Assembly: GCA_051294905.1 (NCBI GenBank)
Contig: CM119376.1
Coordinates: 13,640,001-13,704,000, forward strand
DNA length: 64,000 nt
Source of the DNA: Botryllus schlosseri
Lineage: Eukaryota
Reading direction: 5' to 3'
Part shown: positions 23,342 to 47,558 of the stretch, piece after piece
Position numbering within the stretch: the first letter of the stretch is position 1
How the letters are laid out: every line of letters begins with the position of its first letter
Program-made: the position numbers and the translations under genes
Notes under the pieces: model-generated
The model's input: the letters and a program-made list of their open reading frames with translations, nothing else
The model's database searches: none
What the model was told of the DNA's origin: nothing

Positions 23342-26300
23342 GTAAGTAAAAATGTCACAGTGAAAGAGTACAAGAGTAACCTAACCCACCAGTGGACTGA
23401 ATGCGTGTAAATGAATATTATGTAGCTTTAGATTTATTAATTTTAATAATTTATAGAGAGAACAATCGATTACATTCCTAAACACTCTGTAACTGCATGA
23501 TAACATGACTGATTCGAATCGGAGTGTTAAGCTTGGAATCGACTATACGGTATATAATGAAATTACCTAAAAAAGTTGACCAAATGACTGTACTCGACTC
23601 GGGTGCAGATGCCGAGATGCCGTCATTTGTTGGGATCCCTGTCGTGTCCCAGTATGTTACTGTCTGTATCTAAAACAGTGGACCGAATAAAGAGTGATGT
23701 AATTTGTCGCTTCTTCGGTTTTCCCAGACGTTGCTTGGTGACTGTCAGCATAACTACTTCTCATTTAAATCATAATCACCATATGGAAGTCTGATAACCA
23801 GGGCTCCGGCTGCGTAGTCGCAGTTTCGCTAATTTTTCTTGAATAGAGTTGTGAGTCGCAGAACTATTTTGAAATTCCGCATTTGAGTTGAGTACAGGAA
23901 GCGCAACGAGCTGGAATCTAAGACAAAGTTTGTTAAAATGCTATACTTCGATATCAAGTGAACTGCTTCAGAATGTTTGTGAAAATCGCCAATTGAATAA
24001 AATAGGATTTGCATGTATCGTAAAACCTGTAAAAAAGTTATTACTGTTATTAGTAACATTATGGATGAAATCATATTTTCCTGCAATTCAAGTGCATGGA
24101 CAAATTTCAAGCTGTATCTTTGCGTCTAACGCAAAATTACTTGTCGCGTCGCTAATTCGTGTTGTCTTAAAAACTATGCATTATTACCGTTAAAGAGCAG
24201 TTACATCGCCTGGTTGCTGTGACAATATAACTCGTTACATTGATGCAAATCCATTTAGTCAACCAACCACGAGGTGGGAAGGATTTTCACTTTTTCAGAA
24301 TTTTCCTCCAGTATTGCAAGTCTGAAAATTTTTAAAAAGTGTCCTTTTTCAGATTCCTGAAATATGGTAACCCTAATTAACCGCACAAATAATTCATACC
24401 ATTTCATGTGAATTGCTCTCGTCAGGTTTCTGCAGATTGGGATCAATTCAGTTTTTGAACCGATTTGATATCTCCAAATTGTCTGCTGAGATAGTGTAGC
24501 AATCGTGTTGTGCTGAAATGGTTATGACCAATAAACCTCCGATCTTGTGCGATATTATCGTCATAACTGTAGCCAGCCCCACTCAGGTTCGCATTTGAAA
24601 CAGCATTACTTGAAGCTAAATTCTGTAATCGGAGAAGTGCCTGATCCTGCCTACGCTGCTAACACTAATAATGGTTTCGAATAAACATTATTAACGTATT
24701 TAATTTTTATCAGTGAACTTTACTACTATAGTTCGGAACGTTCACTTAACTTTCAAAGTACACAGAAACTTTTCGCAGACCGGCATCAGTCCGCGGACCA
24801 GCGGTTAAAGACCGCTGATGTATAGGAGCCACCTAAGAAGCCTTATAATTTCCCCACTATTCCGTTTATGTATTTCTAATGAATTTCACCAGACAGGTAG
24901 TACGATATTGTAGTTTATGTTCATACAGCATAATTTTACTTAAATTTACATCCGTTACATCTTCATCGAAGCTGCCTTGATAATAAACAATCGGCTATCA
25001 TTGCTCTTTGTTTTCTCTCCATACCTCTGTGTCGGCACTGCAATGTAATTTCTAGAATTGCTTTTGCAGATATAGTGAGGTTATGATCATGGAGCGTTGT
25101 TCTCTTGAGCAGAATGCCTCCTAAGCTAGCCCCAAGCAAAAAGAATAGTGGAGGAAAGCTGATTCTGAAAAGAAGTCTTCAACAGCCTTATACATTATCC
25201 TGGTGAGTGGGATGTGCATCACTGTCGTACAGAAATCAGTTATTTGTCAGTTAGTGCAATTTGCAATGCAATTGATTCCGAGAACCTAGCTACACAATTT
25301 CTTATAAAGGCGAGTAATACATAATATATATATGATCAACATGAGGAACTTGAAAATATTGAATTTAAGTGATGAATTAAAGGACTTCTATTGATTCAAT
25401 CGACGATGATAGTGCGTTTTTTAATATCAATTGTAAAAATGTTGGTACTGGGTCGCTGGTATATGCCTAGTATACAAACCAGCGTCAGTTAATCAGTTAT
25501 TTTGTGCAAAAATCAGCTTTGGTTATGAGCCATCAATTGAATGAAAATGAATGACTTGAGCTTCTTAAATCTAAATGATTTGTTTCCACTCGGGTACAAG
25601 ACCGTAATATTTTTACCAAATCTGCTTGGAGAGCAGGCTTGTTGTAAATTACTTCCAATACAACTAGCTAGTTGCATTTTTTAATTATGGGGGATGCCGT
25701 CACGCATTGCAAAGACAACTTATCGAACCAGACGCACCACATCTCCTTAACTGGGACCTATAATGTTTCGTCCCTTATCATATCCTATCAGAAATAGTGC
25801 TCACCTGTATTGAATTTGGGCACTTATAATTTTATAAACATGGTTCTTCGTATTTTTATCTTTGAAATTTCACTACCGGTATTCCTATTTTTACAGCGAT
25901 GACCTATATTTGATGTGAATGGGAATCTTGATCGTACAAGTCAGTCCTTCCAATGCTAAACTAAAAATGAGATTCCTTGAAATGACTATGCTTATTTATT
26001 GGCTGAGGGTACTTGTGTAGAAAATGTCACCAATTGTTTATTTTCATTTAAAGGATAATCGCCAGGTTTGCTATTCATTATGTCAATTAGTGATGTGGTG
26101 TGATATTGTACTCGACTACGTTAGCCTTCAGGGAAATATTTGAGCAGTATATGTGCTGGAAATATATTCAACCTCATGCTCTCTGTTATCTGTATATTGA
26201 TATATTGCTCCATTTCCAGGCCATCACTGCCGAAAGGCGTCAATTCCTTCATCCTGAAAGAGCTTGTAGAGTAAGTGTTCGAGTGTTGTAGCATGTTGTA

Positions 26301-27163
26301 TGGGTGTAATCCATGTATTCCTATATCTATTGTCTATCTGAATAGTTGAAGGCCTTTCAAGATTGTTTCAGCTATTTGTCTACCAAATAACATTCAAGTT
26401 TGTAATTTGTGGCCATGATATGAATGGCCTGAATGGGTTCAGATTTAAACTCTTTCATATCTTCACTGAAATGCATGGTGAATTTCCTTTCCCTCTATCT
26501 CGGTATCATTCCCAACTCTTACTTTCATGCAGTATTTAGCATCAAAGTCAATGACAGTTTCTCTAAACTGGTGAGATGTTATCAACTATCGTAATGTAGG
26601 ATTAATGGGGTACATTGTGTGTTCTATATTGTTAATAAATTTCTCTCGAATTTGGAAAGTGAGTCAGGTCACTTCATGTACCTGAAGAGCTTCTTGTAAT
26701 GTGTTGTCGCTCACAAGGAGCGTAGCCTGTAGATTACAAGCTGCAGAAATGAAAGCACCTAGTGTTATATCCTTGAAAGAATCCAGTAAGCTGTTTGGAT
26801 AATTGCTATTTCATATGTTTGATACTAAGGTAATCATTTTCTGTCATTCTGGTGGGAATGCTGTAAAATTGACCTGGCCAATGCACACACCAATGCTGCT
26901 TTTTACGTGGTATTCATGTATGTGATTTGTGTTGATTTTGAATGCAAATATGATAACAATATTTAAGAATGCGTCTGGTTTAATTATTTTCATCTCGCAT
27001 TTTAATGCTACATACAGGATGTACCACTTCCGGCGGACCTAAAAATTGCATCTGAATATGTAACAATAACTTTGTAATATCAAATAAGAGAAGGTATATT
27101 TCACATATGAACTCGCACGAGGCACGACGTTCATAAATACGAAATGCGGTGTTTACTACACAG

Positions 27164-29088
27164 GAACTTGACTCATATATTTTACCACCTGTCGACTCTC
27201 AGTTCCGTAACAATGGCGCTCCTGCATCTGCAACTGACGCCCGGTATGGGAATAACGTCCTTGAAATAAAGAGTCTTTCACTTCGATTCAGGTATTTGAA
27301 GCAGCATCCCGAGTTGAAGAAAGTGAAATCTGCAGGAAAACGTAAGAGAGAAGAAACGCTGTCAGAATCGGAAACACAAGCAAAATCTTTCAAGTAGGTT
27401 ATGCGAAGGAATTTTTCTTTTTTGACTTGTTTCAAGTTGTGGCCAGGTCACCAGCTTGTTCCCTTTTCTTGCAGTGTCATTCGTACGATCTAATCCAAAC
27501 TAAGCACTATGGTACTTGCCTGTGTAAAGCGAGTCATTGGTATGACTGGCAATGTTGTTCTCACTGTTTAGCAAAATCTAATCGGCTACTGCAGTTGTGA
27601 TGATCTTGTGAGCTGATATTGTCTTTGCGAACCATAAACGGAAAGGTCATGATTCAACTCTCTTTTCCAAACTTTTGAACTTTGCGAGATGGTTCCAGAG
27701 ATTGTGCAGTGCTCAATAGTACAATTTCGATTGGGCTCAAGTTTGATGAATGATGATGGTCTTGATACATCAGATTACATCTTTTGATTTTCTCTGGAGG
27801 TGGATTTGGATGAGAGGACCAGAATTTTTTTAAAGGTTATCTATGTATTCGTTGTGACATATAATAACCTAGCTGGCGAATCACGCATCCATGATGTTAT
27901 CACAAAACATGGATCAACTAGTAGTAGCCTACATGGTGTACTTCATAATTGGTCAAGTTTGGCAACAATCTCCTAGTAGCAACAAAAGCATTTTGTATTC
28001 GAGGAGCAGAAAATATCTCGTCAAATGTATGGCGCGCATGAACTGAACATTCATATAACACTAACTCAATGGAACCAATGACTTCCTGGCAGTTCTCTCA
28101 TTGACTTGGGACACAATATGCTTTCCCTTTATCCAACGGAACCAATCCTATACCTCTCTTGTCATCTTGCGAGATAGTGTCATCATCTGTTATTATTTTT
28201 GAGAAATTGTTATGTTGATTTTTACTGTTACTTACCAAGTTCACCACGCCTATATTATGATTCAAGAAATGCCGTACCTGTATTTAAAATAATCTCTGAA
28301 CACAGAAATATATTTTTGATTAACGTGAACTTGTTTTTATACATCCAGTATTAGTCCTTCACTGAAGTATTCAGAATGGCACTAATTGCTGCTATAAATC
28401 TAATGTGGTTTCTTCAAGGTGTCGGTCCTATGATTGTTTCAATTCAGCTGAGTAGTGATTAAGACGAACAGCACTAATCCACAAAGTTATCTGCGATATC
28501 TGAACCACTGATTACAGCGGCAGTCAATAATATTACGGCTGCTCGAACTTTGATCATACATCTTTCTCGAATTAATCTGAAAACGTTTCCTTGCGTTTTA
28601 GATCACCGATTGTTTCCGGAATCAACATCGTCACAAAAAAGTTAGAACGTGGAGAGCTGGACTTGGCTTTAGTTTGTAAGAGCGCGAAACCGGCTTTGTT
28701 GACTCAGCATCTAATTCCTTTGTCGGCTACAAGATATACTCCAGCCGCTAGCGTTGCCGGGCTCAGCGAAAAGCTATCGTTCGAACTCAATTTGAAATCG
28801 GTGTTGGCCGTCGGCATCAGCGCGAAAGACTGCCCCGAGATTAGTAAATTAATTACGAAAATTACAGAAAAACTGCCTCCAATTGAGGTACCTTGGCTGC
28901 CTGGCATACCGACAGTTGGAGATTCAGAGCTTGCTGAGTCAGAGCATGGGAAGGACAGCGGCTCGTTTAATCTGAACCGTGGAGATTCTTTCTTACCTAC
29001 AACAGTTTGCGTTAACAAAAGCGCCTCTGGGAACAAACGGAAGATATCGCGCGCTGCGAAGGCCGAGAATGACGGACACGCGGCGTAG
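27164..29088 (+). CDS. RPP38: Ribonuclease P/MRP protein subunit p38 (L7Ae fold); exons 27164-27243 (tentative), 27292-27393, 28602-29088; start exon uncertain
   Basis: Last exon [39 protein letters not shown]...[21 protein letters not shown]...LPPIEVPWL matches human RPP38 AIGVNEVTRALERRELLLVLVCKSVKPAMITSHLIQLS...VPRLSERI...LKCVLALA...VPSLSVPWL. Splice 27393/28602 is phase-consistent. Stop TAG at 29086-29088. Confidence 0.85.
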
Positions 29089-32000
29089 AGTCAAGGTCTA
29101 CACCCTCAACGAGGACAAGCAGTGGGACGACAAGGGCACGGGGCACGTGTCGTACACGTTGGACGCGCGTGTTCACAGCACGACGTTGATCGTACGCGCA
29201 GAGCAGGACGGCTCGACTTTGCTGGAGTCTAAAATCTTGCCGGACACGGCGTATCAGAAACAGCAGGAGACTCTCATCGTCTGGTCGGAGAGCGACAACA
29301 CGGACTTGGCTTTGAGCTTTCAAGAGAAGCCGGGGTGCGACGAGATATGGGAAAGGATTTGTCAGGTACGTTTGTGCCAATAAAATATTCCAAACACTTT
29401 TGGTTGATGTTGTGTCTGAAATCTCTTCCACGGTAATGGTGTTCCCATGGTCGGTCGACATATATAAGGTTATAAGCGTCCGACACAAGCACGTGTCGGT
29501 TCAAGTTGAGGTTTGAGTTTTGGTAAGGGTTTATTTCAGGGTTATGGTTAGTTTTGGGATTATAAAGTCACATGCTCAACTGTCATTTTTCACTGTGCCG
29601 CATACTCGACTGTCGGGCATACCTGGTCGAGAAAATGGGGAGTATGAACATTTTCCAAATTCCCCAAGGTAGCATCGATTTATTTGGGTCAAGTACGTGT
29701 TTAAATGCCGATAAAACAAGGATAAGGTAAGTTTCCTGGTGTTGACGAACTGGCAGACATGGTATAAGCCGGTGTAAGCTCCACTCTCTCGCGTCACATA
29801 CACATTATAAAATCTGATTCATCAACACATCGGATTGGGTATTTCAGAGAGCTCCGATCCCGGCTTGTTCAGTAAGGTTATTAATTAAAAAATCAAAGTC
29901 TACACGTTTGCTACCCCCAGAATAAAGGCGGACGACCTGTCCGAGAGTCGCCACTCCCTGGTTCCCAACTAAATATCTACGCTATCAAGGAGTCGTGTCA
30001 CTAAATATCATGTATTGCGTGCAGGTTCAAGGCAAAGACCCGTCAGTCAACATAACGCAAGACGTCACCGATGACGCTGAGGATGAAACGGGGATGGACG
30101 GCGGGTCTGATCTTGGTCTCAGCTCTAACGAGCCCGTCGAGCTGCCACCCTGCGAGTTGAACCGGCTTGAAGAGATCGAAAACATCTTCAATTCGTGCCT
30201 GCCCAACATGGCCCGTCGCGAAAAGCTTGCCGTCGCAGTCGAGAGCGCCGACTACATACCCAAGCTGCTGTCGCTGTTCAGCATGAACGAGGACCTCGAA
30301 AATATCGAGGGGCTGCATCACCTGCACGAGATTTTCAAAGTGCTCTTTATGCTGAACAAGAACGGCATATTCGAGATGCTGTTCAGCGAGAAGAACATCG
30401 TCAACACGATCGGGTGTCTGGAGTATGACCCGGCGCTGCCCGAACGGCGGCGGCACCGGGAGTACCTGACCAGGGAGGCGAAGTTCAAGGAGGTGCTCCC
30501 GATCACTAATTTGGAGCTGAAGAAGAAGATTCATCAGACTTTCCGCGTGCAGTACATTCAGGATATCATCCTGCCGACGCCGTCGGTTTTCGAAGAGAAC
30601 CTGCTTTCTACTTTGAATTCTTTCATCTTTTTCAACAAGGTGAGTGTGTGATTGTCGGAGGGTTGTTGTCGACGTGACGTATTGTACGCGCAGATCAGCG
30701 TTCAGTGGACTGGTAGCAGTGAATTTGTTATTTTCTAATCGAAAAATCCTGCTGATTTTCAAATCCACATTCTGAAATCATGTCCAGCATTGACTTAAAT
30801 TCATAAAACAGTGGTGACAAGGAGACGGAAAATGATCTCCTGAATCCAGTCCAGAAAAGATCGTTAATCCAAATTTGACTAAAATTTTCAAATCCTATTT
30901 TTCAACTTCGAACCAGTCGGTGGCGTACACCATGTTTTATGTGTTACACTGTGGTTTCGAGCGGCCGTGAGTACCTGTCGCTTGTCCAACATCCTGCTTT
31001 CAGTGGCTAATCTGCATTTTTTGACGTTTTCTGGCCGTCGTTTTGGGCTCTGTGTATTCCAGGGTTGTGATGACGCGAGGCACAATTTTCTGATGACTCG
31101 AGTCATTTTCGCAAAATTCAGAAACGACTCGACTCGAGTCAATCTGTGTTTTGACTCGACTTGGACTCGAGTCATTGCGCATGACTCGAGATTTAGACGG
31201 CCAGGGCCGACATTTCATTGTAATTTCAAAGAATAGTGAAGTTACCACACTATTAGGCTATGATTTCGTCTATTGGTAATGGTACTTGAAAATGCGACCA
31301 GAAACTGCTAAAAGTGACGAAAATTAGTATAATATCAATGCGAACCATTCGATGTCACCAAACAGGGTTATATAAAGTGGGTTAACAAGATTTTAACTAG
31401 AAACTGAGCAGTCAACACAATGACTTGGACTCGAACTCAACCCTCTGATCGCTAACTTGGACTCTGACTTGACACGGTGGTGAATCGAAAATGACGCCAC
31501 TTGACTCGAGTCGAAACTATAAAAGTGAGACTGACTCGTGACTCGGGGGCCTGCCACTTGGTTACAGCCCCGGTGTATTCAATTTGATAGCTACCTATAT
31601 CTTTACTGTGTCTAAAATTGCAAGCCTAAAATGCCGTTTTTCCGTCCGACGTCTAATCGCGGCTCGTTCCCAGGTCGAGATTGTCAGCACGGTCCAAGAG
31701 GACGAAACCTTCCTCCGCACACTGTTCGAGCAGCTCAAAGACGAGTCCCAGACGGACGCCCGCCGCACCGAGCTGGCCGGCTTCCTACGCGAACTGTGCA
31801 ATTTCTCGCAGTCGCTGCAGCTCGCCAACCGCGAGGACTACTTTCGGACTATCTCCGAGCTCGGCGTGCTCCAAGTCGTCGAGTCCGTGCTGGCCTCGGA
31901 CGACACGAGACTCCGGCAGTTGGGCGTCGACGTATTCACCCACGTCGTAGAGTACAGCCCGTCGATGGTGCGTGATTTTGCTCACGGCGAAATGCGCGAC

Positions 32001-33248
32001 CAACCGGGCAACGACGACGAACTGCTGATAAACCTTGTGATAGAGCAGATGATATGCGACCCAGACCCGGAGCTTAGCGGTGCCATGCAACTCATGGAGA
32101 TTTTGAGGATACTCCTCGATCCAGAGAACATGATGGCCAGCAAAAACGAAAAGACAGAGTTTCTCAGCTTTTTCTACTACCACTGCATGCACGTGCTGAT
32201 GGCGCCGCTGTTAGCAAACACATCCGACGACAAACCGGGCAAAGCCGATTACCAGACGGCACACTTACTCAGCTTGATACTCGAGCTCATCACTTTCTCG
32301 GTAGAGCACCACGCCTATCATGTCAAGAACTACATCCTGAACAAAGACCTGCTGCGTAGGATACTGGTACTGCTGCATTCAAAGCATCGCTTTTTGGCGC
32401 TGGCGACTCTGAGATTTTTGAGGAAAATCGTAGGCATGGCGGATGAACTGTATTATCGTTATATCGTCAAAGGGGACTTGCTTGAACCAGTGGTGGCTGT
32501 CTTGTTCCGGTCTGGAAATCGGTATAACCTCCTCAATTCCGCGGCGCTCGAGCTTTTTGAGTATATCCGGGCGGAAAACATTAAACCCTTGATCGCCTAC
32601 ATCGCCGAGATGCACATGGGACGCTTGTGCGATATCGACTACGTCAAGACTTTTGTCGGGATACAGCAGCGGTACGAGATTCATAAGGACCGGATGAACA
32701 GGTTAGGCGAGGCCAGTGACTCGGTTACTGTGCCGGACCAGAGTAGATTCAGGCGAGACGAGCGTGCGCCTGACGAAGACGAGGAAAACTGGTTTGAGAC
32801 GGAGGACGAGGCAAATGATATCTTCCTGACTTTGAACAACGCCAGCGAGGAACACGAGATACTCAAAGTGAACATCGACAAGATTTTGGACGGCGACAAG
32901 GACGCAGAGGCGTCTGCGGATGACAACGGTTTTAAGATGGCCGCAATCGCAGCAGAACGCGCGCAGGCCAAAATCTCGATCAACTTGAACGGGATTAAAA
33001 CCAACGGCGACGCCGATAAATCTACCTCACCTCAGCCCGCCCCGGTAAAAACCGGGCTCGTGGGACTTGTCGACTACGATGAGAGTGATGACGAAGACGG
33101 GGAAACGGAAAACAGCGGGCAGAGTCCGCTGCAAAAAGAAGACGAATCCGCAGGCGCCGCGAAACGAACTGAACCGTCGGACGTAGCTAACGATGTCGAG
33201 GTGACCGCGAAAAAACCGAAGCTGCAAACGGTCGGCTCTGGCGATTGA
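29069..33248 (+). CDS. PPP4R3: Protein phosphatase 4 regulatory subunit 3 (SMEK/Psy2), 828 aa; join(29069-29365,30025-30639,31674-33248)
   Basis: [31 protein letters not shown]1-like N-terminus; ICQ|VQGKDP and FFNK|VEIV junctions are GT-AG phase 0; SMK-1 region; conserved FRRDERA and LVGLVDY motifs. Confidence 0.95.
29379..29420 (+). promoter_or_regulatory. Polyadenylation signal plus GU-rich downstream element inside PPP4R3 intron 1 (putative RPP38 3' end)
   Basis: AATAAA at 29379-29384, 13 nt after the donor, followed by TTTTGGTTGATGTTGTGTCTG from ~29399. Confidence 0.55.
31060..31572 (+). mobile_element. hAT-type MITE family A, copy 2 (PPP4R3 intron 2)
   Basis: CAGGGTTGTGA...ACAGCCCCG; exact 8-bp TSD GTGTATTC (31052-31059 and 31573-31580); colinear with 1425-1992. 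Confidence 0.9.
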
Positions 33249-33561
33249 TTGATCAGTGGGTTCGAAACGCCAACGCCCGCATTGAGCTCGGCGGTTTGTT
33301 TGATCGGCGGTCCTCGCGTTCGAATATTTTTACCACAACGACGCCTTTTGCCTGTCGCGTCCTCGAGCAAAATTGTGTGACGCAAAAAATAGTGAGCGGT
33401 GAGCTGTTTTCAGGAGGAGTTTTACGAGATAATCTGCGTCCGTACTGCCGTTTTTGAATGGGATCGAATTTGTGTGCGCGATGAATTTGCGAGGTGGCAG
33501 GGTCCTGTCGTACGTAGCAAATGGATTTGATTTCGTTACCTTCCGTGTACTGCCTCGCAGG

Positions 33562-33885
33562 TAGGGCTGCGCGCAACAATTCGAGTCGAGTGAGACGATT
33601 TTGTCAAACGCTGGAATTGTACGTTAATAGGTATATTATCAATGACGATTCTCGTTTTTGAACTTTGTTGTTCATGCCAAAATACAAATATTGACTTACT
33701 GTCATGGAGAATGACATTTCTGTGATGTAGTGACCAGCCTGGAGCACTGTTAAAAAGCGCGATGACATAGGTGCGGTCAAAACTAGCGATATTTTCTTCG
33801 TAAAGGTGGAAGTCTGTTGTAACATCATAAGTGAAACTTGACTGGAAGCCCAATACTCGATTCGGAATCGACTCGCTCAGCCCTA
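33562..33885. mobile_element. MITE-like element with TAGGGCTG...CAGCCCTA termini
   Basis: 8-bp inverted termini with GAGTCGA/TCGACTC subterminal motifs; no TSD seen. Confidence 0.5.
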
Positions 33886-33889
33886 CTTG

Positions 33890-34100
33890 TCGCGAGGTGA
33901 CTTCCCCGAAATTTTACAAGCCTTCGGAGACAGCTCAACATATCAGCTGTCTCGTGTAGTGGCTCAATTGCTGCGTGTAACGAAGTTTCCGCATTTTCGC
34001 AAGTACAACCTCTCGCATCTGGTACGTCCCTGGACTGTCATGTTCCAAGCTTTGTACATTGGTTTTTTAAATGTGTTTAGATTAGTTATGAGATGCCGCT
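33890..34100 (-). pseudogene. Decayed hAT transposase C-terminal (dimerisation) domain
   Basis: Minus strand reads PGT..CERLYLRKCGNFVTR with a frameshift and stops, resembling the hATC motif PATS..SERxFSxAGNIVT. Confidence 0.45.
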
Positions 34101-35079
34101 CTCTCTCTATGATAAGATGCTACGTTTTGAGAGTGAAGTATACTGCTGGTTTATTGATATTTTTGTCTTAGGACCATCGTTTTCGTGTCCTGTCCAATTG
34201 CGCCTGACTCTGTTACCAGGCGAGATACGTAATACCATAACATGGCAGCTTTTCAATGGATTTGGTGTTTCGGTAACAGCGTTGAATGACACGTTGATAT
34301 GGAGATTCGTCGCTTATCATCTTCATCATGCATTGGCTACACGTAACTATCAACCATCTCACTTTCAACGCTTGTTTTTATTCAAAACCATTGGAATGCA
34401 CTGCTGCCCAAGAATTCAACAGCAATGCAATGTCACACTGTACCGGTAGTACTTCCAACGTAAAATCATTCTTGACAACGCTAGCAAAGCGCAAATCATT
34501 GATAAAAGAAATTCTCACCTTAGTTCTCGTTGAAAGTTGTTGAGAAATAATAACTTCTGTAAAACGCCCGTTACGATCCCTCGGTCCATCTCTGCCTGCT
34601 ATCTTTTCCTTAAACCCGACGAGTTTTCACTGTTTAAACCTCCGAGTTAAACGCACGCAAGTTTATGTCGCAGATGTAGAAATTTTGTAATTTTTCAATC
34701 ATTAACGTTAGTTACTAAGCATCGAGAGTTACACTTGCCAAGTGACTCGATAGGCTTCAACTTGTTTGTTAGGTGTGATTTACGCGACGTGAAGGTATGT
34801 CTTTATTGGATTTTTTTTATTGTACCTCGCTGAACACTTGTTATCTGATTTTCTGGTTGGTATTCGTGGAAATATGGTGGGTCCTGGTGGACTGGCTCGT
34901 GGTTGAAGTGCGCGATCCTATGCTCATCTCGTTCTGAATACCTTTCGTGTCTGTTTTTTGTTACTTTGTTCTGCTCTCTGAACTTCCTTAATTCCGATGG
35001 TTGTACAATAAATTAGCCTAATGCCATTTTGCTGTCTTTCTTTAGAGTGGCGATCATGAAATGAGCCTTTTGAAACTTG

Positions 35080-35337
35080 GCGAGCGAGATAGTGTAATGT
35101 TTATGTGTCCAGCTTCTCGATCGGTAGATCGTGGGTTCGATCCCCGGCCGGGTCATACCAAAGACTTGAAAATTGGTATCCGCAGCTATCCTGCTAGGCG
35201 CTCAGCAATCATGGAGAGCATGAAGGAGAAAAAGAAACGGGTGCGCAGATTAGATGACCTCACGGCCGTATCGCAACTACGTCGTCAAAGCATCTCAATG
35301 GTGCAGGCAAAAAAGAATAACATCTCTCTCTCTCTCT
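35080..35337 (+). mobile_element. tRNA-derived SINE (MetaSINE-like), copy 1
   Basis: A-box-like TAGTGTAATG, B-box GGTTCGATCCC, central GGGTCATACCAAAGACT..AAAATTGGTATCCGCAGCTATCCTGCTAGGCGCTCAGCA, and a (CT)n tail; four copies in the window. Confidence 0.85.
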
Positions 35338-36090
35338 GCTTGCAATCTGCAAGGAATTTATTGAGGAATTCATCAGCATACTGACAATAGTGAATTCAAA
35401 GTGAATGTACATGTGCATTGTGCAAATTCTCAGGCATGTCCGGTCATGATAGTACTGCTCCATGTACATTGTACAATGTAGTACAAGATTGATGTTTAAG
35501 AAAACAATCCGAACACTCCAGACATTGCTAGGTTGCCTAGAATCACACTCCACAACTAAATTTGGTCAAGTCCAAATAGTACAAGAGAAGCCATGATATA
35601 TATCAATGAAGCGAAGTTATTTCTTTCAAGGATATATGGTGGGAAACTCCGTCACTTTGCCTTGACCAATTGACCAAGCATCGTGTTTCAGGCGTGCCCG
35701 AAGGAACTGTGATATGTTTTTAAACGTTTTCATCTTGAGAAAGGCAGCGCCTGGATGAAGAAATTGCAAACCAGTAACTGAGGTCCAGTTTTACAGGCTC
35801 CGTGAAAGGTGAATGTAGTAACTACATTATTCGTAGGTATAAGATCGTCCCATATATTTTTATGTCCTTTGTAAACTAGGATGAGAGTAGGAGTGGCCAG
35901 TGGGTGAAAGTGAAGACCTTATATAATCAATTAGACGAGATGGTTGGTACTGGACTCGTCATCAGCTTCCGAAACTTTCGCAACATGGGGACTAATAGGG
36001 GACCGAGTTGATGCGAGTTTGAGCCCCTGGTCAACTTCATTGCGACCTGTTAAAGCGATAGTGATATAAGTCTTGAATTAGGGCTACCAT

Positions 36091-37620: not shown

Positions 37621-38034
37621 ACCTGTATGTATTTTGTCTATATAACGAAGTTTTCGGCCAAGGTTTTCTCGCTGCCGATCGTCCCGGCACACTTTTTGGA
37701 GTCGCATATGTTACATGGCCTAAAACTTTATAAGTCTCGGTCCGTCGTGGCGCGGTAATGACCAACGCCGATATGCCCATTTCTATAAATCTTGCGTATT
37801 TTTTCGTAGGGTAAGAGTACCCGGCCAATATTCAAGAAATCTGGCATCTTGAAATCGCGGCTTGCGCGAAATTTTTTTGAAAAAGTTGCATAAATTTTCA
37901 AAATATACTCTATAATTTATGCTAATTCACGAAATAATTTTGGGTCCCCCTTCGAGCTCCCCCCCCCCAATCGGGTGTTTGGGGTGCGGCAGTTACGGTC
38001 CTGCGCCTAGGCCAAGGTGGGTGTCTGATTCCAT

Positions 38035-38301
38035 AGAGAGAGAGAGAGAGAGATATGATATTATTTTTCGCCTGCACCATCGATATGCTTTGACGACGGA
38101 GTTGCGATACGGCCCCATGAGGTCATCTAGTCTGCGCCCCCGTTTTTTTTTCTCCTCCATGCTATCCGCGATTGCTGAGCGCCTAGCAGGATAGCTGCGG
38201 ATACCTATTTTCGAGTCTTTGGTATGACCCGGCCGGGGATCGAATCCACGACCTACCGCTCGAGAAGCCGGACGCATAACCATTACACTATCTCGCTCGG
38301 C
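38035..38301 (-). mobile_element. tRNA-derived SINE (MetaSINE-like), copy 2, ~360 bp upstream of the PCNA ATG
   Basis: Reverse complement of 35080-35337, with an (AG)n tail on the plus strand. Confidence 0.85.
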
Positions 38302-38645: not shown

Positions 38646-39449
<804 letters not shown>

Positions 39450-41355: not shown

Positions 41356-44300
41356 CTATGATTGCTGGGTATTCTCACAGTCTTTGAGTATGGCTGCAGC
41401 CTGTGGAACATAATACGGCTGAGGGGATGGCGGTGGATTTTTCAACAGGAAATCTCCGATATAGGTAGGGTCGCAGATATGAACCCTATGCTTGCGTATC
41501 AAGCACTTCATGAGGTCTGACGACAGAGATTTTGTTCGATCCAGATCGATGAATATGTGGGTGATTTCAGAACCCAGTTCAGACGATATTCCTGAATGTT
41601 CGATAACTTTTGCCGAGCCGCATTTAAGCACCCGCTCGAAACCTTTCTGTTGCCTACTGTTCACATCAAGCAAAACCGACCATCCAGAAAACGCGCCTCG
41701 CGGAGAGCTTGCTTCTTCTGAGTCGCCCAGACTCTTGCGCCATCGGTAGGCAGCTAGCGGTATCAAACTTTGCAGCGCTTCAGGGCTGTTCGTGAGCTTG
41801 GCCGTATCTGGGTTTTCGGGGTTCCCGTACTCATATGGGTCTTCGTTTACAAAATTTCCTACCTGTTGGCACTCATCTAGATATTTAGGATGTAAAATAC
41901 GCCTCCCGCACGCCAAGGCTGAGAGATATTTTTCGCTTCGCCCAGGTCTCGGAACCAACAGATGAGTACATTTAAGTTCGAATGTCGCCGTTTCTATTAG
42001 ATTTGCTCCCAATTTCGAGACGACAGTGGTGTATTTGTCTTTGTCGTTAGACATCGATGACATCATAAAGAACATATCGGAAGGAATTCTCGGAATATCA
42101 ATGGTTGTCTCATTGTTCTCAGTCGTTTCGTCTTGACAAGACTCGTCCTTTCTCATGAGCCTCAACATTTCTTCCCTGCCGGTCGGGTCATCCCAACTGA
42201 CTTGCACGTCCTGCGAAAGTTCGGTAGCATTATTATCCCTGGTTAAATTAGATTGGAGGGTTGACACTCGTCTTTGAGCAGGCGACGAAACATGGGATTT
42301 ACTAACACTCAAGCGATGAGCTTTAACATCTTTGTTTCCGCTGGTTTCCGCCATGATATTGGCGAGTTTCCTTTGCAGCATGTCCCTGCATTCCTGAGAA
42401 TCAATCGGCTCGTCCGCGTCCTTTTTGGCACGTTTCCGCCGTGGCGTTGAATCGTCGTTATCTGACGTTTCTGAATTGCTGGAGACGCGAGTCGACAAAC
42501 GGGTTCTGTTTTGGGAAGACCGTAATTTCTGCGATTGCGATTCCATTTGAATGGACTTGTTGGGATCGTACACGTGAGGGTACATCGTCTCGTCTAGTCT
42601 GGTTTCGGCGATAACGCACGACTCGATCCAATACGGCGACACTATCACTTTCCCGTCCGTTTTGGCAGTGCAAAATTCTTTGTTCTTGTCTTTGAGTCGT
42701 CCTTGAAACAAGAAGTGAGTACACGCGTTATCGTACACCCAGCGAAACTCGCCGGAATGAGCAGTCACTACTTTGGACAGATTCGAGAAGTCCTTGTGCA
42801 GTTTTGACGACAGCGCAATCACAAGGCCCTCAAATATATTAGATATATTCTTCCCATCTTCGACATTTTCATTTTTTGTATTCTCTTTATCCGAGGTAGG
42901 CGAGGACGTATCAGTTACATGTTTTCCCAACCTGCCGTCCAAATTTTCGATGAGATAATCCGGTATCTTTTCCACGGCCGCATCGAGGCATCGCGACATA
43001 ATCTCACTCAGTGGCGTGTCCGGATTTTTTCTCGCCTCGTCCTTAACTTTGCTACGCTGCTCGGCCGGCGTTTTCAGAAGCTCAAACACCTCCGTCAAAT
43101 CGAACGACATGTTCCCGCCTATGCTTCCCTTTTTCATGAACTTACTAGGAGTCTCCAGATCGTCATGTATTCTCTTGTAGCGGGTCGATACCGGAGTTTC
43201 CGCGTTTTTCATGGCCTCGTCGAGAGCCCGTTTCCTTAGATCTTTCTTAATCTCCATTTTCTCTCGAATTCTGTTCACGACACTCGGAGCGCGTGGTATC
43301 GGAGGGAACTCTGAATCCCATCCCGTGTAACCAACTGCTTTGCGATGATCTGCCCTTCTGTTTGTTACATTTTCAGTAGATTTGGCACAACCCGTCGACA
43401 CCGAACTATCACTGTGCTCCGAGACGACGAAGTCTTCTTCCTTTTGTTTCAAACCCGTTCTTGCGCTTTCATAAATCCAATCCTCGTTTACGATAGGAAT
43501 ACCCCATTTCGTGCAGCCCACAAATTTCTCCCCACCAGGTTTGTGTATTATCAAATGAGTAGTTCTCTTCAAATCTGTCATATCTCTTCTCGCTACTAGA
43601 TCTTGTGAAACACCTCCCAATTCAATAATCAACCGAGACAAAGAATTACGCTCCGCATCTCTATACTTACTCAAGCACGCCACGACTCCAGCCAATGGTT
43701 TTGAATTGGCAGGTACTGAAAATGGAGTGAACATGGGATGATTTGTTGCTGGTACGAGCTCATTTTCTTGGGTGCAGTACTGTATCCAGAATATGGTAAC
43801 TACTTCGGCAGCAGTTTTATCAACGAGCCAGCCCGTAAGCGGCACAACAGCATAGTCTGCAATTCTTTTGCTGTCCACTGGAAGCAGAGATCCTCCATTC
43901 GATTCGATATCAGACATCAAAGATTTTGATTCAGCGCCGGCAAATCCAACAACAAAAAAGGTATTTCCTGAAAATATTCCACTGTAAGTCATGTCAGAGA
44001 CCATGGTTGTCATATCGTTAGCAGTGGTTTCCTCATCCCCTTCATTTTCTGAAATGTTACGCTTTGACATTGTAGAGTTTTCCGGATACGGAATACCCAC
44101 ATTATCTTGATCTGTTGTCTCGTTAGCATACTGCGAAAGTACGGTATCATCATCTTCAGGCATGAGAAAAGGTAACATTGAGCCATCGTGTACAGAAACT
44201 TTCTGTTTGGCATCAACCTTTTTTACAGTATCCACATCATTCATCGTGATTTCATCTTCCGTAATCGCGTGCGTTCTTGTTTCCTCGTAATCCGAAGGTA

Positions 44301-45678: not shown

Positions 45679-47296
45679 CACGGTTTCTAACACTATGAAA
45701 TTCTACAGCAGTTATTTCTAAATTATGTGAAGAAATAATACAATATTAGGATTGCTATCTTTGTGATCATGTTGACTGTAGCAAATTGACAGGCTACCTA
45801 CTTCCCCTATAGTCCCCCATGTTCGATACTCTGTCCAGTGTTTTACCGTGTACCTCAAATACCCCAGGCTATAAAATCTAGGTTCATTTTTTGAAATAAA
45901 TCCTGTGTGATGAGAGCTTATCTGCATAGAATAATCAAGTTATGAAACAGAAAGTTCTACGTGACGTTGCCACCAATTCTACTCTGGCAAATACCGTGCC
46001 CATTTTTATATCAATCCTGGTATTAACGATGTACGAATGTAAACAATCTAAAGGGGGAGCAAATAGGAATATTAAGTTGATTTACATAACACTTGAGTAG
46101 TCTCGAGAAAAATGTTTCCCCTGATAAAAAAAAAACACCATAAATTATGCTCACTTCGGCAATCTTAAGTCGATCAATGGGACAACTTACATAGGGCTCA
46201 TAAGTCATGGTCATACATATATTAAAAACATAGATATAGGGCCTACTGTCGACTCCACTATAAATTCGGGCACTGGATAGCCCGGACAATCACTTCATTC
46301 GGAAAAATGCACGGGAACGAAACAAAAGTAAAAATTGCACATTAAAAACTCGACCACTTCAACAGACAATTCTATTCTCCGCTAACTCAGACACAGGGTC
46401 GCTATTCCTATCGTTATAGGATATGACACAATAAACAGTACTTCATTCGTTTCATCACAAGATGAGTCATTAGGTTATGGCGAAAAAACGTTGATCCATA
46501 CATTAACAATCACAATAAACACTTATAAGGCCGTGCCAGTGCCATCAGCCTTAGTCGCTTTGAGTTCGGTGAACGCTATATATGATGTGTTTTACACGGT
46601 AATATGTAATAGTATGTAGTGATTCTTTAATCGTTGGGTATCGAGAGACAATACAACTAACCTGAAGGTATAAGTTTTGCCCCTCCTACCGGCGGTACCG
46701 GGTATTGCCGGTAGGGTCTCGTATACCATAAGCACGACCCTGACATTATGGTGACCGACCTTAGTTTGAAAGTCGCAACTGACCTTATTTTGCATGCAAT
46801 CACACCAACCTTCGTCGGTTGGGAATTATTACAAGAAGAGATTTCCATGCACATGATGCATCTGCCTTCAGAGCCCAAATCCTTAAATTGTATATACACC
46901 AAGGCGCGAAATGTTTTGAATCACTGATCCGTGTCTTGTCAAAAGGGTTCAGTTTTCCATGATGTGAATGTGTCAGTTGAGCTCAATTTTCAATAAGAAT
47001 TCAAAACACCGCAAGACTGCGATACTATAACCTTTATAAGGCCTTTATAAAGGCTATGGCGATACAATGAAAAGATAGGACGGTGTCGTAAAGACTTGGA
47101 GTAGTCTTTGAAATCAGACACCCATCATCAGAGGTGGTCAATAGTCAAGAAAGCTACTCAAGTAGAAGCAGAAGTAGTGACGAAAAATTCGACTCAAGTA
47201 CGAGCAGCAGTACTTCTCCCATAAGCAACCTAAAACTACTTGAAGTAGAAGTAGAATTGACTGACTTTAAATCTACTCAAGTAAGTATAAGTAGTT

Positions 47297-47558
47297 GAGA
47301 GAGAGAGATATGGTATTCTTTTTCGCCTGCACCATCGAGATGCTTTGACGACGGAGATGCGATACGGCCTTTATAGTAAGGTCATCTAGTCTGCACCCCC
47401 GGTTTTTTTTCTCCTCCATGCTATCCGTGATTGCTGAGCGCCTAGCAGGATAGCCGCGGATACCAGTTTTCGAGTCTTTGGTCTGACCCGGCCGGGGATC
47501 GAACCCACGACCTACCGATCGAGAAGCCGGACGCACAACCATTACACTATCTCGCTCG
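47297..47558 (-). mobile_element. tRNA-derived SINE (MetaSINE-like), copy 3
   Basis: Reverse complement of copy 1; inserted in the family B element. Confidence 0.85.

What the first reader, a model, noticed from the sequence alone, without database searches (positions are those of the whole stretch)
28981..29420. RPP38 and PPP4R3 are overlapping same-strand genes: one locus, two mRNAs
Seen in sequence: the conserved PPP4R3 start ([14 protein letters not shown] at 29069) lies inside the RPP38 reading frame, whose TAG is at 29086-29088. The two CDSs therefore overlap by 20 nt in different frames, with no intergenic DNA. PPP4R3 exon 1 would be the 3' UTR of RPP38. Established: ascidians have SL trans-splicing and operons, but cistrons usually abut rather than overlap in coding sequence. 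Inference: a dual-use exon resolved by competing RNA processing (splicing versus cleavage/polyadenylation), coupling an RNase P/MRP subunit to the PP4 phosphatase.
Basis: partly seen in the sequence, partly recalled or inferred. Interest (0 to 1): 0.85.

Follow-up and report, generated by a model that had tools for sequence, protein, structure and literature searches.

The report
RPP38-PPP4R3 two-protein sea-squirt mRNA
In this sea squirt the end of the RNase P subunit gene RPP38 does overlap the start of the phosphatase-regulator gene PPP4R3 by 20 bases. The pair is linked across tunicates, and RPP38 is almost free of ATG triplets, so it looks like one messenger RNA from which ribosomes make both proteins.

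Summary
RPP38 has four exons (CDS 25114-29088, TAG at 29086-88). The conserved PPP4R3 start is ATG 29069. The two CDSs overlap by 20 nt in different frames. Contigs from two independent runs match this stretch without indels.

The overlap is the extreme of a conserved junction with no room for UTRs. In eight other tunicate loci, RPP38 sits directly upstream of PPP4R3. The distance from stop to ATG is -8, +1, +2, +2, +3, +5, +10 and +146 nt; a ninth has about 28 nt between called genes.

The new finding is that the RPP38 coding sequence is an AUG desert. It holds 1-2 ATGs in about 700 nt, against 8.5-11.6 expected, in five full-length species. No tunicate RPP38 examined has an internal Met. The leftover ATGs open 3-9-codon mini-ORFs. 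A strong-context uATG lies exactly 25 nt upstream in four species and opens an 11-codon uORF that ends just past the RPP38 ATG.

In the window species a spliced contig carrying the spliced leader runs through both ORFs.

My best reading (about 0.55) is one polycistronic mRNA read by leaky scanning and reinitiation.

The parts
25070..25202 (+). RPP38 exon 1. Its 5' end is a trans-splice acceptor (AG at 25068-69) that receives the spliced leader. The RPP38 ATG is at 25114.
   Evidence: In one search, X15 contig record 11 starts with the non-genomic leader TTGGAGTATTTGGTTGTATTA joined at 25068. An 18-mer of that leader occurs 595 times in the genome, against 2 for the control. All 8 copies inspected share (A)TTGGAGTATTTGGTTGTATTAA(G). 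The intron junction 25202/26220 is seen in X23 reads and in X1 and X15 contigs.
25083..25124 (+). Upstream ORF (MIMERCSLEQNAS*). Its second uATG (25089) has a strong context (A-3, G+4). Its stop lies 8 nt past the RPP38 ATG, so the uORF overlaps the RPP38 CDS by 11 nt.
   Evidence: A strong-context uATG at exactly -25, opening an 11-codon uORF with the same overlap, is present in the window, L002, L004 and Styela clava.
25114..29088 (+). RPP38 gene. CDS exons are 25114-25202, 26220-26270, 27292-27393 and 28602-29088, giving 242 aa. The CDS holds no internal Met codon and only one ATG triplet in any frame before the PPP4R3 start.
   Evidence: ATG statistics are. dN/dS is.
28946..28975 (+). Mini-ORF (MGRTAARLI*) in the +1 frame. 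It holds the only ATG inside the RPP38 CDS, in a strong context, and ends 93 nt before the PPP4R3 ATG.
   Evidence: A 9-codon mini-ORF sits at the homologous E-H/N-G codons in L002, L005, L004 and Styela clava.
28986..29005 (+). Candidate internal trans-splice acceptor, ttctttcttacctacaacAG, which is the SFLPTT codons. It lies 63 nt before the PPP4R3 ATG. No use of it has been seen.
   Evidence: The sequence is. Similar pyrimidine tracts followed by AG occur in L002 and L005 but not in L003. No read supports its use.
29069..29088 (+). The 20-nt overlap of the two CDSs. The PPP4R3 ATG is at 29069 and the RPP38 TAG at 29086-88, with frames offset by +1.
   Evidence: Contigs show no indel here.
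29069..33248 (+). PPP4R3 gene. CDS exons are 29069-29365, 30025-30639 and 31674-33248, giving 828 aa with 19 internal Met.
   Evidence: Pfam matches are. The junctions 29365/30025 and 30639/31674 come from contigs.
29379..29384 (+). AATAAA 14 nt into PPP4R3 intron 1. It is a candidate poly(A) signal for an RPP38-only mRNA under the rival model.
   Evidence: Styela clava has AATAAA 7 nt into the same intron. L003 has none. No poly(A)-tailed read was seen.

Best explanation
RPP38 and PPP4R3 form an old tunicate transcription unit. Its main functional product is one spliced, spliced-leader-capped polycistronic mRNA, ordered as short uORF, RPP38, then PPP4R3.

Proposed mechanism (inferred). Most scanning ribosomes start at the strong uATG 25 nt before the RPP38 ATG and translate 11 codons. 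They stop 8 nt past the RPP38 ATG and so bypass it. They then resume scanning through an RPP38 coding sequence that selection has kept almost free of AUGs. The one remaining AUG opens a 9-codon mini-ORF that ends about 100 nt upstream of PPP4R3. The ribosomes then start at the PPP4R3 AUG. A minority that leak past the uATG, or step back after uORF termination, make RPP38. Ribosomes finishing RPP38 terminate within 20 nt of the PPP4R3 AUG and may reinitiate there.

The 20-nt overlap itself is a by-product of this UTR-less junction. The RPP38 stop has drifted. A relative (L014) stops at AAT GAC TGA, where the window reads AAT GAC GGA. A change that is synonymous for PPP4R3 Thr2 (ACT to ACG) would therefore move the stop to the next TAG.

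Shown: the gene structures, the overlap, the spliced-leader acceptor, RNA continuity across the junction, the conserved linkage, the AUG desert and the uORF. Inferred: that the mature translated mRNA is bicistronic, and the paths ribosomes take.
For: 1. AUG desert. ATG triplets between the RPP38 ATG and the PPP4R3 ATG number 1 in the window, 1 in L002, 2 in L004, 1 in Styela clava and 2 in L025. Dinucleotide shuffles give 9.0, 8.5, 11.5, 11.0 and 11.6, and none of 1000-2000 shuffles was as low. The L005 last exon has 1 against 6.8 (2 of 1000). Codon-order shuffles that keep the zero-Met composition expect 5.3-7.0 (fraction as low 0.003-0.07).
2. All seven tunicate RPP38 sequences have 0 internal Met. 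The three vertebrate-type sequences checked have 2-5.
3. Controls are not depleted. These are PPP4R3 CDSs, PCNA, RPP38 introns, two vertebrate-type RPP38 CDSs, and eIF4E upstream of Notchless in the same genome. RPP38 has 1.4 ATG per kb against 12.9-24 for the other CDSs in the window. Only 0.2% of all 705-nt windows in the 64 kb have 1 ATG or fewer.
4. The residual ATGs open 3-9-codon ORFs that end 93-187 nt before the PPP4R3 ATG in the four species where this was measured.
5. The architecture is conserved in four species. The uATG sits at exactly -25 in a strong Kozak context, the RPP38 ATG context is only adequate (A-3, C+4), and the PPP4R3 ATG has A at -3. L025 also has an overlapping uORF.
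6. The junction leaves no room for UTRs in nine of ten loci.
7. X15 contig record 11 (4350 nt) runs from the spliced leader through spliced RPP38 into spliced PPP4R3. L002 and L004 are spliced RNA contigs holding both ORFs.
8. In the X23 run, whose reads include template-switch-tagged 5' ends, reads fall on RPP38 exons 1-4 and none on PPP4R3 exons 1-2. This is weak evidence.
9. Synonymous sites are saturated between species (pS 0.75) while dN/dS is 0.07-0.2. The desert has therefore persisted through long divergence in a gene that is still coding.
10. Precedent. An AUG-poor upstream cistron marks leaky-scanning bicistronic mRNAs in green algae and in Drosophila stoned and Snapin (PMC11892635).
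Against: 1. There are no long reads, 5'/3' end maps or ribosome data. De Bruijn contigs can merge overlapping mRNAs or derive from precursors, and short spliced-leader or poly(A) branches are probably clipped during assembly.
2. In X1 the contig covering RPP38 plus PPP4R3 exon 1 has mean depth 15.4, against 50.4 for the rest of PPP4R3. That fits extra PPP4R3-only transcripts as well as it fits 3' bias.
3. Back-translating the window protein with local codon usage gives 1.3 ATGs, and synonymous shuffles are not significant. The depletion is therefore written in the amino-acid sequence and could partly reflect composition.
4. The mini-ORF AUG has a strong context and would cost efficiency.
5. 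A ribosome stopping at the RPP38 stop sits upstream of PPP4R3 exon junctions, which would normally invite nonsense-mediated decay.
6. One ascidian (L003, junction TAAAGaATG) has a tight junction but no out-of-frame ATG depletion in its last exon (5 against 6.2). Tight spacing alone therefore does not require this mechanism.
Confidence: 0.55

Rival explanations
1. Mutually exclusive RNA processing. Each primary transcript yields one of two products. One is an RPP38 mRNA whose 3' UTR is PPP4R3 exon 1, cleaved and polyadenylated just inside PPP4R3 intron 1 after AATAAA 29379-84. The other is a PPP4R3 mRNA made by spliced-leader trans-splicing at an acceptor inside the last RPP38 codons, for example 29005|29006 or 29067|29068.
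For: Ascidian operons are normally resolved by trans-splicing, and Satou et al. already proposed mutual exclusivity for operons without intercistronic DNA (PMC1488885). A good pyrimidine tract followed by AG lies 63 nt before the ATG and recurs in L002 and L005. AATAAA lies 14 nt into intron 1 here and 7 nt into the same intron in Styela clava. In X1 the contig breaks exactly at the exon 1 donor, so an intron-continuing branch exists, and depth differs (15.4 against 50.4). Single-cell X21 reads fall on 28643-29430. An RPP38 mRNA ending in intron 1 would escape nonsense-mediated decay.
Against: The model does not explain why the whole RPP38 CDS, exons 1-3 included, is kept free of AUGs in six species, nor why a strong uORF that bypasses the RPP38 AUG is conserved. 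No spliced-leader-tagged or poly(A)-tailed read was seen at the proposed sites, although depth was too low to count as absence. L003 has no AATAAA in intron 1. Intron 1 depth in X1 is no higher near the donor than deeper in the intron. The two models can coexist.
Confidence: 0.3
2. PPP4R3 has its own promoter inside the RPP38 gene, in intron 3 or exon 4. The two genes would then overlap but be transcribed independently.
For: Six X23 reads (2 start positions) carry the template-switch oligo tail AGAGTACATGGG joined to + strand sequence near 28020-28044 in RPP38 intron 3. This suggests an RNA 5' end there. The L014 PPP4R3 contig begins only 97 nt upstream of the ATG.
Against: A leader starting at about 28020 would carry hundreds of intronic bases; intron 3 holds 29 ATGs in 1208 nt. 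The reads may be copies of one or two molecules, or fragments of pre-mRNA. The model does not explain the AUG desert in RPP38 exons 1-3. Contigs are continuous from the spliced leader at 25070.
Confidence: 0.05
3. A canonical Ciona-type operon junction. The RPP38 mRNA would be polyadenylated at the G of the acceptor AG that also receives the spliced leader for PPP4R3, with no shared sequence between the two mRNAs.
For: This is the rule for nearly all Ciona operons (PMC1488885 and PMC2760879). L003 (TAA-AG|A-ATG) could work this way.
Against: Every AG upstream of ATG 29069 lies upstream of the RPP38 stop at 29086-88, so the upstream product would lack a stop codon. The same holds for L002, L004, L005, L014 and Styela clava.
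Confidence: 0.03

Closest known systems
Ciona operons without intercistronic DNA (Satou et al. 2006, PMC1488885; Satou et al. 2008, PMC2760879)
   Same: Both involve same-strand neighbouring genes in a tunicate, one spliced leader, no spacer DNA, detectable dicistronic RNA, and no functional relation between the two genes. Mutual exclusivity of upstream and downstream mRNA formation was already discussed for these operons.
   Different: In Ciona the two mRNAs abut, with poly(A) added at the acceptor G. Here the stop and start codons themselves abut or overlap, so the mRNAs cannot merely abut. In addition, the upstream cistron is an AUG desert preceded by a bypass uORF. To my knowledge neither feature has been described for Ciona operons.
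Caenorhabditis elegans SL1-type operons (cited in PMC1488885 and PMC7986045)
   Same: They have no intercistronic region, and 3' end formation of the upstream gene competes with trans-splicing of the downstream gene.
   Different: Those operons keep a 3' UTR with AAUAAA upstream of the trans-splice site. No coding overlap and no AUG-depleted upstream ORF have been reported for them.
Leaky-scanning bicistronic mRNAs: Drosophila stoned and Snapin, and green-algal bicistronic loci (PMC11892635)
   Same: The upstream ORF is deficient in AUGs in all frames, the inter-ORF distance is short, the ORF1 start is suboptimal or bypassed, the two proteins are unrelated, and the arrangement is conserved over long divergence.
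   Different: Here the organism has spliced-leader trans-splicing and could resolve the pair. ORF1 is long (230-242 codons). The bypass seems to use a conserved overlapping uORF rather than only a weak Kozak context. In two species the two ORFs overlap.
Human RPP14/HsHTD2 bicistronic mRNA (reviewed in PMC4705651)
   Same: An RNase P protein subunit is the upstream cistron of a conserved bicistronic mRNA that also encodes an unrelated protein.
   Different: It involves a different subunit (Rpp14, not Rpp38) and a different partner. The second ORF lies in the 3' UTR rather than abutting, and the mechanism was not investigated. The resemblance is probably coincidental.

Membership tests
RPP38 (RNase P/MRP protein subunit p38, L7Ae-fold) | Sequence homology to RPP38 across the L7Ae-like core | tested here: met
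   Styela clava RPP38-like at 4.6e-33 and mammalian RPP38 at 3e-16; a profile of the ascidian and vertebrate sequences recovers mammalian RPP38 at about 1e-85. The Pfam L7Ae match is only 19.3 bits against a cut-off of 22.1.
PPP4R3 / SMEK (PP4 regulatory subunit 3) | N-terminal EVH1-like domain followed by the PP4R3 armadillo-type domain | tested here: met
   EVH1_PP4R3 at 2.8e-21 and PP4R3 at 4.7e-62; 65-82% identity to annotated PPP4R3 proteins; an 828-aa CDS.
Ciona-type SL-resolved operon | Same-strand genes less than 100 nt apart with no intercistronic DNA | tested here: met
   The distance from stop to start is -20 nt.
Ciona-type SL-resolved operon | The downstream mRNA carries the spliced leader at an acceptor at the gene boundary | tested here: inconclusive
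   only 26 and 12 raw reads were laid and none lay at the junction. Contigs cannot show clipped leader branches.
Ciona-type SL-resolved operon | The upstream mRNA is polyadenylated at the G of the downstream acceptor AG | tested here: not met
   All AGs upstream of ATG 29069 precede the RPP38 stop at 29086-88, so such an mRNA would have no stop codon.
Ciona-type SL-resolved operon | Dicistronic transcripts are detectable | tested here: met
   X15 record 11 and X1 record 3, plus L002 and L004 in relatives.
Leaky-scanning / reinitiation bicistronic mRNA | The upstream ORF and the inter-ORF region are depleted of AUG in all frames | tested here: met
   1-2 ATGs against 8.5-11.6 expected in five full-length species, with controls not depleted.
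Leaky-scanning / reinitiation bicistronic mRNA | The ORF1 start is suboptimal or bypassed, and the ORF2 start is in a good context | tested here: met
   the RPP38 ATG has A at -3 and C at +4. A strong uATG at -25 opens a uORF ending past the RPP38 ATG. The PPP4R3 ATG has A at -3.
Leaky-scanning / reinitiation bicistronic mRNA | Both ORFs lie on one mature, capped, polyadenylated cytoplasmic mRNA | tested here: inconclusive
   Spliced, leader-bearing contigs span both ORFs, but contigs do not prove single molecules or cytoplasmic location.
Leaky-scanning / reinitiation bicistronic mRNA | ORF2 translation responds to upstream AUGs and to the ORF1 start context | not testable with these tools
   This needs reporter assays or ribosome profiling.

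The most novel reading that the evidence does not exclude
Tunicates have kept, since before the split of the ascidian lineages sampled here, an operon that is not resolved by trans-splicing. Instead it is translated as a true polycistronic mRNA. A conserved 11-codon uORF shunts ribosomes past the RPP38 start. A 230-242-codon RPP38 ORF scrubbed of AUGs serves as the leader of PPP4R3. Stop and start codons are kept within a few nucleotides, or overlapping, so that terminating ribosomes can also reinitiate. If other tight stop-to-ATG pairs in this genome behave alike (MED9-ACTR5 and ZNHIT1 with its downstream ORF were noted), this would be a second, translational mode of operon expression in chordates.
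Probability: 0.45. Interest if true: 0.78.

Novelty: new variant of a known kind. Interest (0 to 1): 0.62.

Why it matters
Tunicate operons are assumed to be resolved into monocistronic mRNAs by the spliced leader. How the many operons without intercistronic DNA are resolved has been an open question since 2006 (PMC1488885).

This locus cannot follow the standard rule, because the stop codon of one gene lies inside the other. It also carries the sequence signature of ribosomes scanning through the first gene, namely an AUG desert and a bypass uORF, and that signature is conserved across deeply diverged tunicates. This gives a concrete and easily tested case for translational polycistrony in an invertebrate chordate.

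It also gives a simple computable signature for finding more cases: a tight stop-to-ATG junction combined with an AUG-poor upstream ORF.

There is a practical side. Gene predictors will tend to fuse, truncate or drop one member of such pairs. Expression counts that assign reads in PPP4R3 exon 1 or the RPP38 tail to a single gene will be wrong.

Tried and rejected
- Assembly indel. Rejected: two independent contigs match 28602-29362 with no gaps.
- Fusion protein by readthrough or frameshift. Rejected: the frame offset between the RPP38 stop and the PPP4R3 ATG differs among species (0, +1 and +2). No joint links RPP38 exon 4 to PPP4R3 exon 2.
- Pseudogene. Rejected: the ORF is intact and dN/dS is 0.07-0.2.
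- Conserved RNA structure at the junction, such as an IRES or a TURBS-like element. RNAalifold on seven species gives -0.7 kcal/mol and essentially no covariation.
- Rfam scan of 24500-35500. Only a far sub-threshold SCARNA7-like hit in intron 2.
- Synonymous-codon nulls for the ATG depletion. Not significant. The depletion sits in the amino-acid sequence, so I do not claim codon-choice avoidance.
- Raw reads. X23 and X21 gave only 26 and 12 reads, so no 5' or 3' ends could be mapped at the junction. Read laying allows one call, so this could not be repeated.
- Ciona locus. The Ciona PPP4R3 protein (P0028) is not on record as a locus, so the Ciona arrangement is unknown.
- The P0003 contig has no DNA available, so only the called gene coordinates are known.
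- Generality in this genome. The MED9 last exon has 0 ATGs against 1.5 expected, which is inconclusive. The ZNHIT1 junction was seen but not analysed. eIF4E upstream of Notchless is not ATG-depleted, but that pair is about 780 nt apart.
- The bacterial-type promoter and terminator scan is irrelevant to a eukaryote.
- The profile search for more tunicate RPP38 proteins returned mostly mammals. The search of the representative-protein library was what found L025 and L026.

Full report
**What is there.** The + strand ORF 28591..29088 ends with TAG at 29086-88. An ATG at 29069 opens [21 protein letters not shown]... in the +1 frame, with no upstream in-frame ATG. The downstream gene is PPP4R3: exon 1 matches EVH1_PP4R3 at 2.8e-21 and exon 2 matches PP4R3 at 4.7e-62. 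Its CDS is 29069-29365, 30025-30639 and 31674-33248, giving 828 aa. The upstream ORF is the last exon of RPP38. The best named hits are Styela clava 'ribonuclease P protein subunit p38-like' (4.6e-33) and mammalian RPP38 (3e-16).

tblastn with relatives located three further exons. Reads and contigs confirm the GT..AG junctions 25202/26220, 26270/27292 and 27393/28602. The CDS is 25114-25202, 26220-26270, 27292-27393 and 28602-29088, giving 242 aa.

**Is it real?** Contigs of two runs from different studies cover 28602-29362/7 with four substitutions and no gaps, so there is no assembly indel. RPP38 is under purifying selection. dN/dS is 0.07 against L002, 0.20 for L002 against L005, and 0.12 for Styela against L004, while synonymous sites between the window and its relatives are saturated (pS 0.75-0.83).

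**Transcription unit.** X15 contig record 11 (4350 nt, mean depth 77) begins with 21 non-genomic bases, TTGGAGTATTTGGTTGTATTA. These are joined at the AG acceptor 25068-69. The contig then runs through spliced RPP38, across the overlap, and on through spliced PPP4R3 exons.

An 18-mer of that leader occurs 595 times in the 495-Mb genome, against 2 for the reversed control. Eight of eight copies inspected share (A)TTGGAGTATTTGGTTGTATTAA(G). It resembles the Ciona leader ATTCTATTTGAATAAG (PMC7986045). Earlier notes of this scan independently describe the same leader in retroelements and SINE heads. RPP38 is therefore trans-spliced at 25070, and RNA continuous across the junction exists. The tool rightly warns that a contig spanning two genes does not prove a single molecule.

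**Comparative anatomy of the junction.** RPP38 lies immediately upstream of PPP4R3 in every tunicate locus I could fetch. Distances from the RPP38 stop to the PPP4R3 ATG are as follows.

| Locus | Source | Stop to ATG (nt) |
|---|---|---|
| Window | this genome | -20 |
| L014 | RNA contig; RPP38 ends AAT GAC TGA inside the first PPP4R3 codons | -8 |
| L005 | contig | +1 |
| L002 | spliced RNA contig holding both ORFs | +2 |
| L004 | spliced RNA contig holding both ORFs | +2 |
| L003 | TAA AG A ATG | +3 |
| Styela clava | NCBI genome | +5 |
| L025 | NCBI genome GCA_961645235.1 | +10 |
| P0003 contig | no DNA available; distance between called genes | about 28 |
| L026 | TARA Oceans scaffold, presumably a pelagic tunicate | about +146 |

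RPP38 identities among these run from 37 to 70%, so the linkage is old. The frame relation between the two ORFs varies, which excludes a readthrough or frameshift fusion. The overlap in the window is the extreme of a conserved UTR-less junction. Where L014 reads AAT GAC TGA the window reads AAT GAC GGA. A change that is silent for PPP4R3 Thr2 (ACT to ACG) is enough to shift the RPP38 stop to the next TAG; this step is an inference.

**Why the standard operon rule cannot apply.** In Ciona, operon genes abut. Poly(A) is added to the G of the AG that precedes the trans-splice site of the downstream gene (PMC1488885; PMC2760879). Here, and in L002, L004, L005, L014 and Styela, every AG upstream of the PPP4R3 ATG lies upstream of the RPP38 stop. 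An RPP38 mRNA ending at such an AG would have no stop codon. Any RPP38-coding RNA must therefore run into PPP4R3 codons, and any PPP4R3-coding RNA must begin inside RPP38 codons. Only L003 (TAA-AG|A-ATG) could obey the Ciona rule.

**The AUG desert.** Between the RPP38 ATG and the PPP4R3 ATG (about 700 nt), ATG counts against dinucleotide-preserving shuffles are as follows.

| Sequence | ATGs observed | Shuffle mean | Shuffles as low |
|---|---|---|---|
| Window | 1 | 9.0 | 0 of 2000 |
| L002 | 1 | 8.5 | 0 of 2000 |
| L004 | 2 | 11.5 | 0 of 2000 |
| Styela clava | 1 | 11.0 | 0 of 1000 |
| L025 | 2 | 11.6 | 0 of 1000 |
| L005, last exon only | 1 | 6.8 | 2 of 1000 |

None of the seven tunicate RPP38 sequences has an internal methionine, whereas the three vertebrate-type sequences checked have 2-5. 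Shuffling codon order, which keeps the Met-free composition, still predicts 5.3-7.0 ATGs (fraction as low 0.003-0.07).

Controls behave normally.

| Control sequence | ATGs observed | Shuffle mean |
|---|---|---|
| PPP4R3 CDS, window exons 1-2 | 9 | 10.7 |
| PPP4R3 CDS, window large exon | 22 | 21.8 |
| PPP4R3 CDS, L002 | 48 | 45.4 |
| PPP4R3 CDS, L004 | 18 | 16.6 |
| PPP4R3 CDS, L014 | 81 | 68.8 |
| PCNA | 18 | 16.7 |
| RPP38 intron 1 | 29 | 29.0 |
| RPP38 intron 3 | 29 | 28.8 |
| Vertebrate-type RPP38 CDS, L015 | 12 | 15.1 |
| Vertebrate-type RPP38 CDS, L016 | 4 | 6.7 |
| eIF4E upstream of Notchless, same genome | 11 | 11.6 |

Within the window, RPP38 has 1.4 ATG per kb against 12.9-24 for other CDSs. 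Only 0.2% of all 705-nt windows on either strand have 1 ATG or fewer.

There is an honest limit. Synonymous shuffles, and back-translation with local codon usage (1.3 ATGs expected), are not significant. The depletion is therefore encoded in the amino-acid sequence, through absence of Met and few ATG-capable dipeptides, and not in codon choice. L003 is the exception among ascidians. It has no in-frame Met, but its last exon holds 5 out-of-frame ATGs against 6.2 expected.

**Conserved start-site layout.** In the window, L002, L004 and Styela clava the mRNA reads as follows.

- Acceptor.
- About 20 nt.
- A uATG at exactly -25 in a strong context (A-3, G+4).
- An 11-codon uORF whose stop ends 11 nt past the A of the RPP38 ATG.
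- The RPP38 ATG in a merely adequate context (A-3, C+4).
- One strong-context ATG at +550 to +592 opening a 9-codon mini-ORF, at the E-H/N-G codons. L004 has one extra weak ATG.
- The PPP4R3 ATG at +701 to +725.

L025 also has an overlapping uORF, and its two residual ATGs are in weak contexts and open 3- and 6-codon ORFs. In the four species above the mini-ORFs end 93-187 nt before the PPP4R3 ATG. In window coordinates the uORF is 25083-25124 and the mini-ORF is 28946-28975.

**Interpretation.** An upstream cistron stripped of AUGs is the recognised signature of bicistronic mRNAs whose second ORF is reached by scanning ribosomes. Examples are the green-algal loci and Drosophila stoned and Snapin (PMC11892635). 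The conserved strong uORF ending just past the RPP38 AUG would make most ribosomes skip RPP38 and resume scanning. The desert would then deliver them to PPP4R3.

RPP38, a low-abundance RNase P/MRP subunit, would be made by the minority that leak past the uATG or step back after termination. Post-termination 40S subunits can move a short way in either direction, as noted in PMC11892635. The stop-start proximity at both junctions (uORF/RPP38 and RPP38/PPP4R3) fits that picture. I put this at about 0.55.

The ribosome paths, and the claim that the mature cytoplasmic mRNA is bicistronic, are inferred and not shown. Weak extra support comes from X23, a run whose reads include template-switch-tagged 5' ends. 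Its reads fall on RPP38 exons but none falls on PPP4R3 exons 1-2.

**The rival.** It has points in its favour.

- A good pyrimidine tract followed by AG at 28986-29005 lies 63 nt before the ATG, and is also present in L002 and L005.
- AATAAA lies 14 nt into PPP4R3 intron 1 here and 7 nt into it in Styela clava.
- The X1 contig breaks exactly at the exon 1 donor.
- X1 depth is unequal, at 15.4 for RPP38 plus exon 1 against 50.4 for the rest of PPP4R3.
- An RPP38 mRNA ending in intron 1 would avoid nonsense-mediated decay.

It does not explain the AUG desert in exons 1-3 or the bypass uORF, and no leader-tagged or poly(A) read was seen. With 26 and 12 raw reads, that absence means nothing. I give this model about 0.3, and both routes may coexist.

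An internal promoter is hinted at by six template-switch-tagged reads near 28020-28044 in intron 3. It is unlikely as the main route (0.05).

**Evolutionary sketch (inference).** The pair may have begun as an ordinary spliced-leader-resolved operon. L026 has a 146-nt spacer, and L003 has a Ciona-like TAA-AG|A-ATG junction with no out-of-frame depletion. In several ascidian lineages it may then have shifted toward translation of the unresolved RNA. The Met-free state of RPP38 in all tunicates sampled suggests the constraint is old.

**Known and new.** Tunicate operons without spacers, and the idea of mutually exclusive maturation, are known. AUG-poor upstream cistrons and bicistronic translation are known in flies, algae and a few mammalian genes. 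One of these is, curiously, another RNase P subunit, RPP14/HTD2 (PMC4705651). I found no report of coding overlap, or of an AUG-desert upstream cistron with a bypass uORF, in a tunicate operon. I rate it a new variant of a known kind. There is no sign of a functional link between RNase P/MRP and PP4.

**Limits.**

- There is no long-read, end-mapping or ribosome data.
- Contigs cannot show single molecules.
- The species are phylogenetically related, so the per-species shuffle results are not independent tests.
- The Ciona locus could not be fetched.
- Attempts to test other tight pairs in this genome were inconclusive.

Noticed in passing
window 28020-28250 (RPP38 intron 3): Six X23 reads (2 start positions) carry a template-switch-oligo tail (AGAGTACATGGG) joined to + strand sequence here, marking an RNA 5' end inside the intron. 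The reads carry the same 5-nt deletion allele at 28039 as the X15 contig. This could be an intronic transcript, a minor internal start site, or a pre-mRNA fragment.
   Followed up: partly
window 27248-27291: Just upstream of the RPP38 exon 3 acceptor, and in frame with exon 3, lies a degenerate copy of the exon 2 peptide ([14 protein letters not shown] against GVNSFILKELVE). It looks like a relic of an exon duplication, or of an older unsplit exon, now intronic.
   Followed up: no
window 26908-27027 (RPP38 intron 2): A weak SCARNA7-like Rfam match (25.2 bits against a gathering score of 65, E 0.009). X15 contigs cover 26275-27068 at depth 9-11, higher than the other RPP38 introns. It may be chance or an unrecognised intronic small RNA.
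   Followed up: no
G000 genome-wide; loci L006-L013: The spliced-leader sequence occurs about 600 times, dispersed, with unrelated upstream DNA and variable downstream sequence. Only about half of 8 copies keep a GT donor. Several carry an AGCTYTGGACC...GGTC motif 45-75 nt downstream that resembles the Ciona Sm-site and hairpin. Many copies are probably retro-copies or SINE heads rather than working SL RNA genes.
   Followed up: partly
L017:1499-1745 (G000:C14, about 15304164-15304410): The MED9 last exon ends with TGA at 1721-23. An out-of-frame ATG overlaps that stop (TGATG). The ACTR5 start (MENANEQSKYYFED...) follows 18 nt later. This is another junction of the operon type with almost no spacer. 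The exon has 0 ATGs against 1.5 expected, which is inconclusive.
   Followed up: partly
L023 (G000:C13:7896269-7899352, minus strand): The ZNHIT1 C-terminal exon (...ETRCLKWTI*) is followed after 9 nt by an in-frame ATG opening a coiled-coil ORF (MAETTLQELVEKNKFLEEELQ...). This is a third very tight stop-to-ATG junction in this genome.
   Followed up: no
window 38658-39449 (+) and 41356-45693 (-): An intronless PCNA gene (263 aa) and a single 1445-codon ORF, probably TOPBP1 (named by eye; no search was run), lie downstream of PPP4R3. Single-exon housekeeping genes fit the high share of single-exon genes reported for tunicate operon regions.
   Followed up: no
window 35061-35384, 37993-38283, 47273-47542: A repeated element appears at least three times in both orientations and gives ORFs such as ...SVGRGFDPRPGHTKDSKIGIRSYPARRSAI.... 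It is a dispersed repeat family of unknown type.
   Followed up: no
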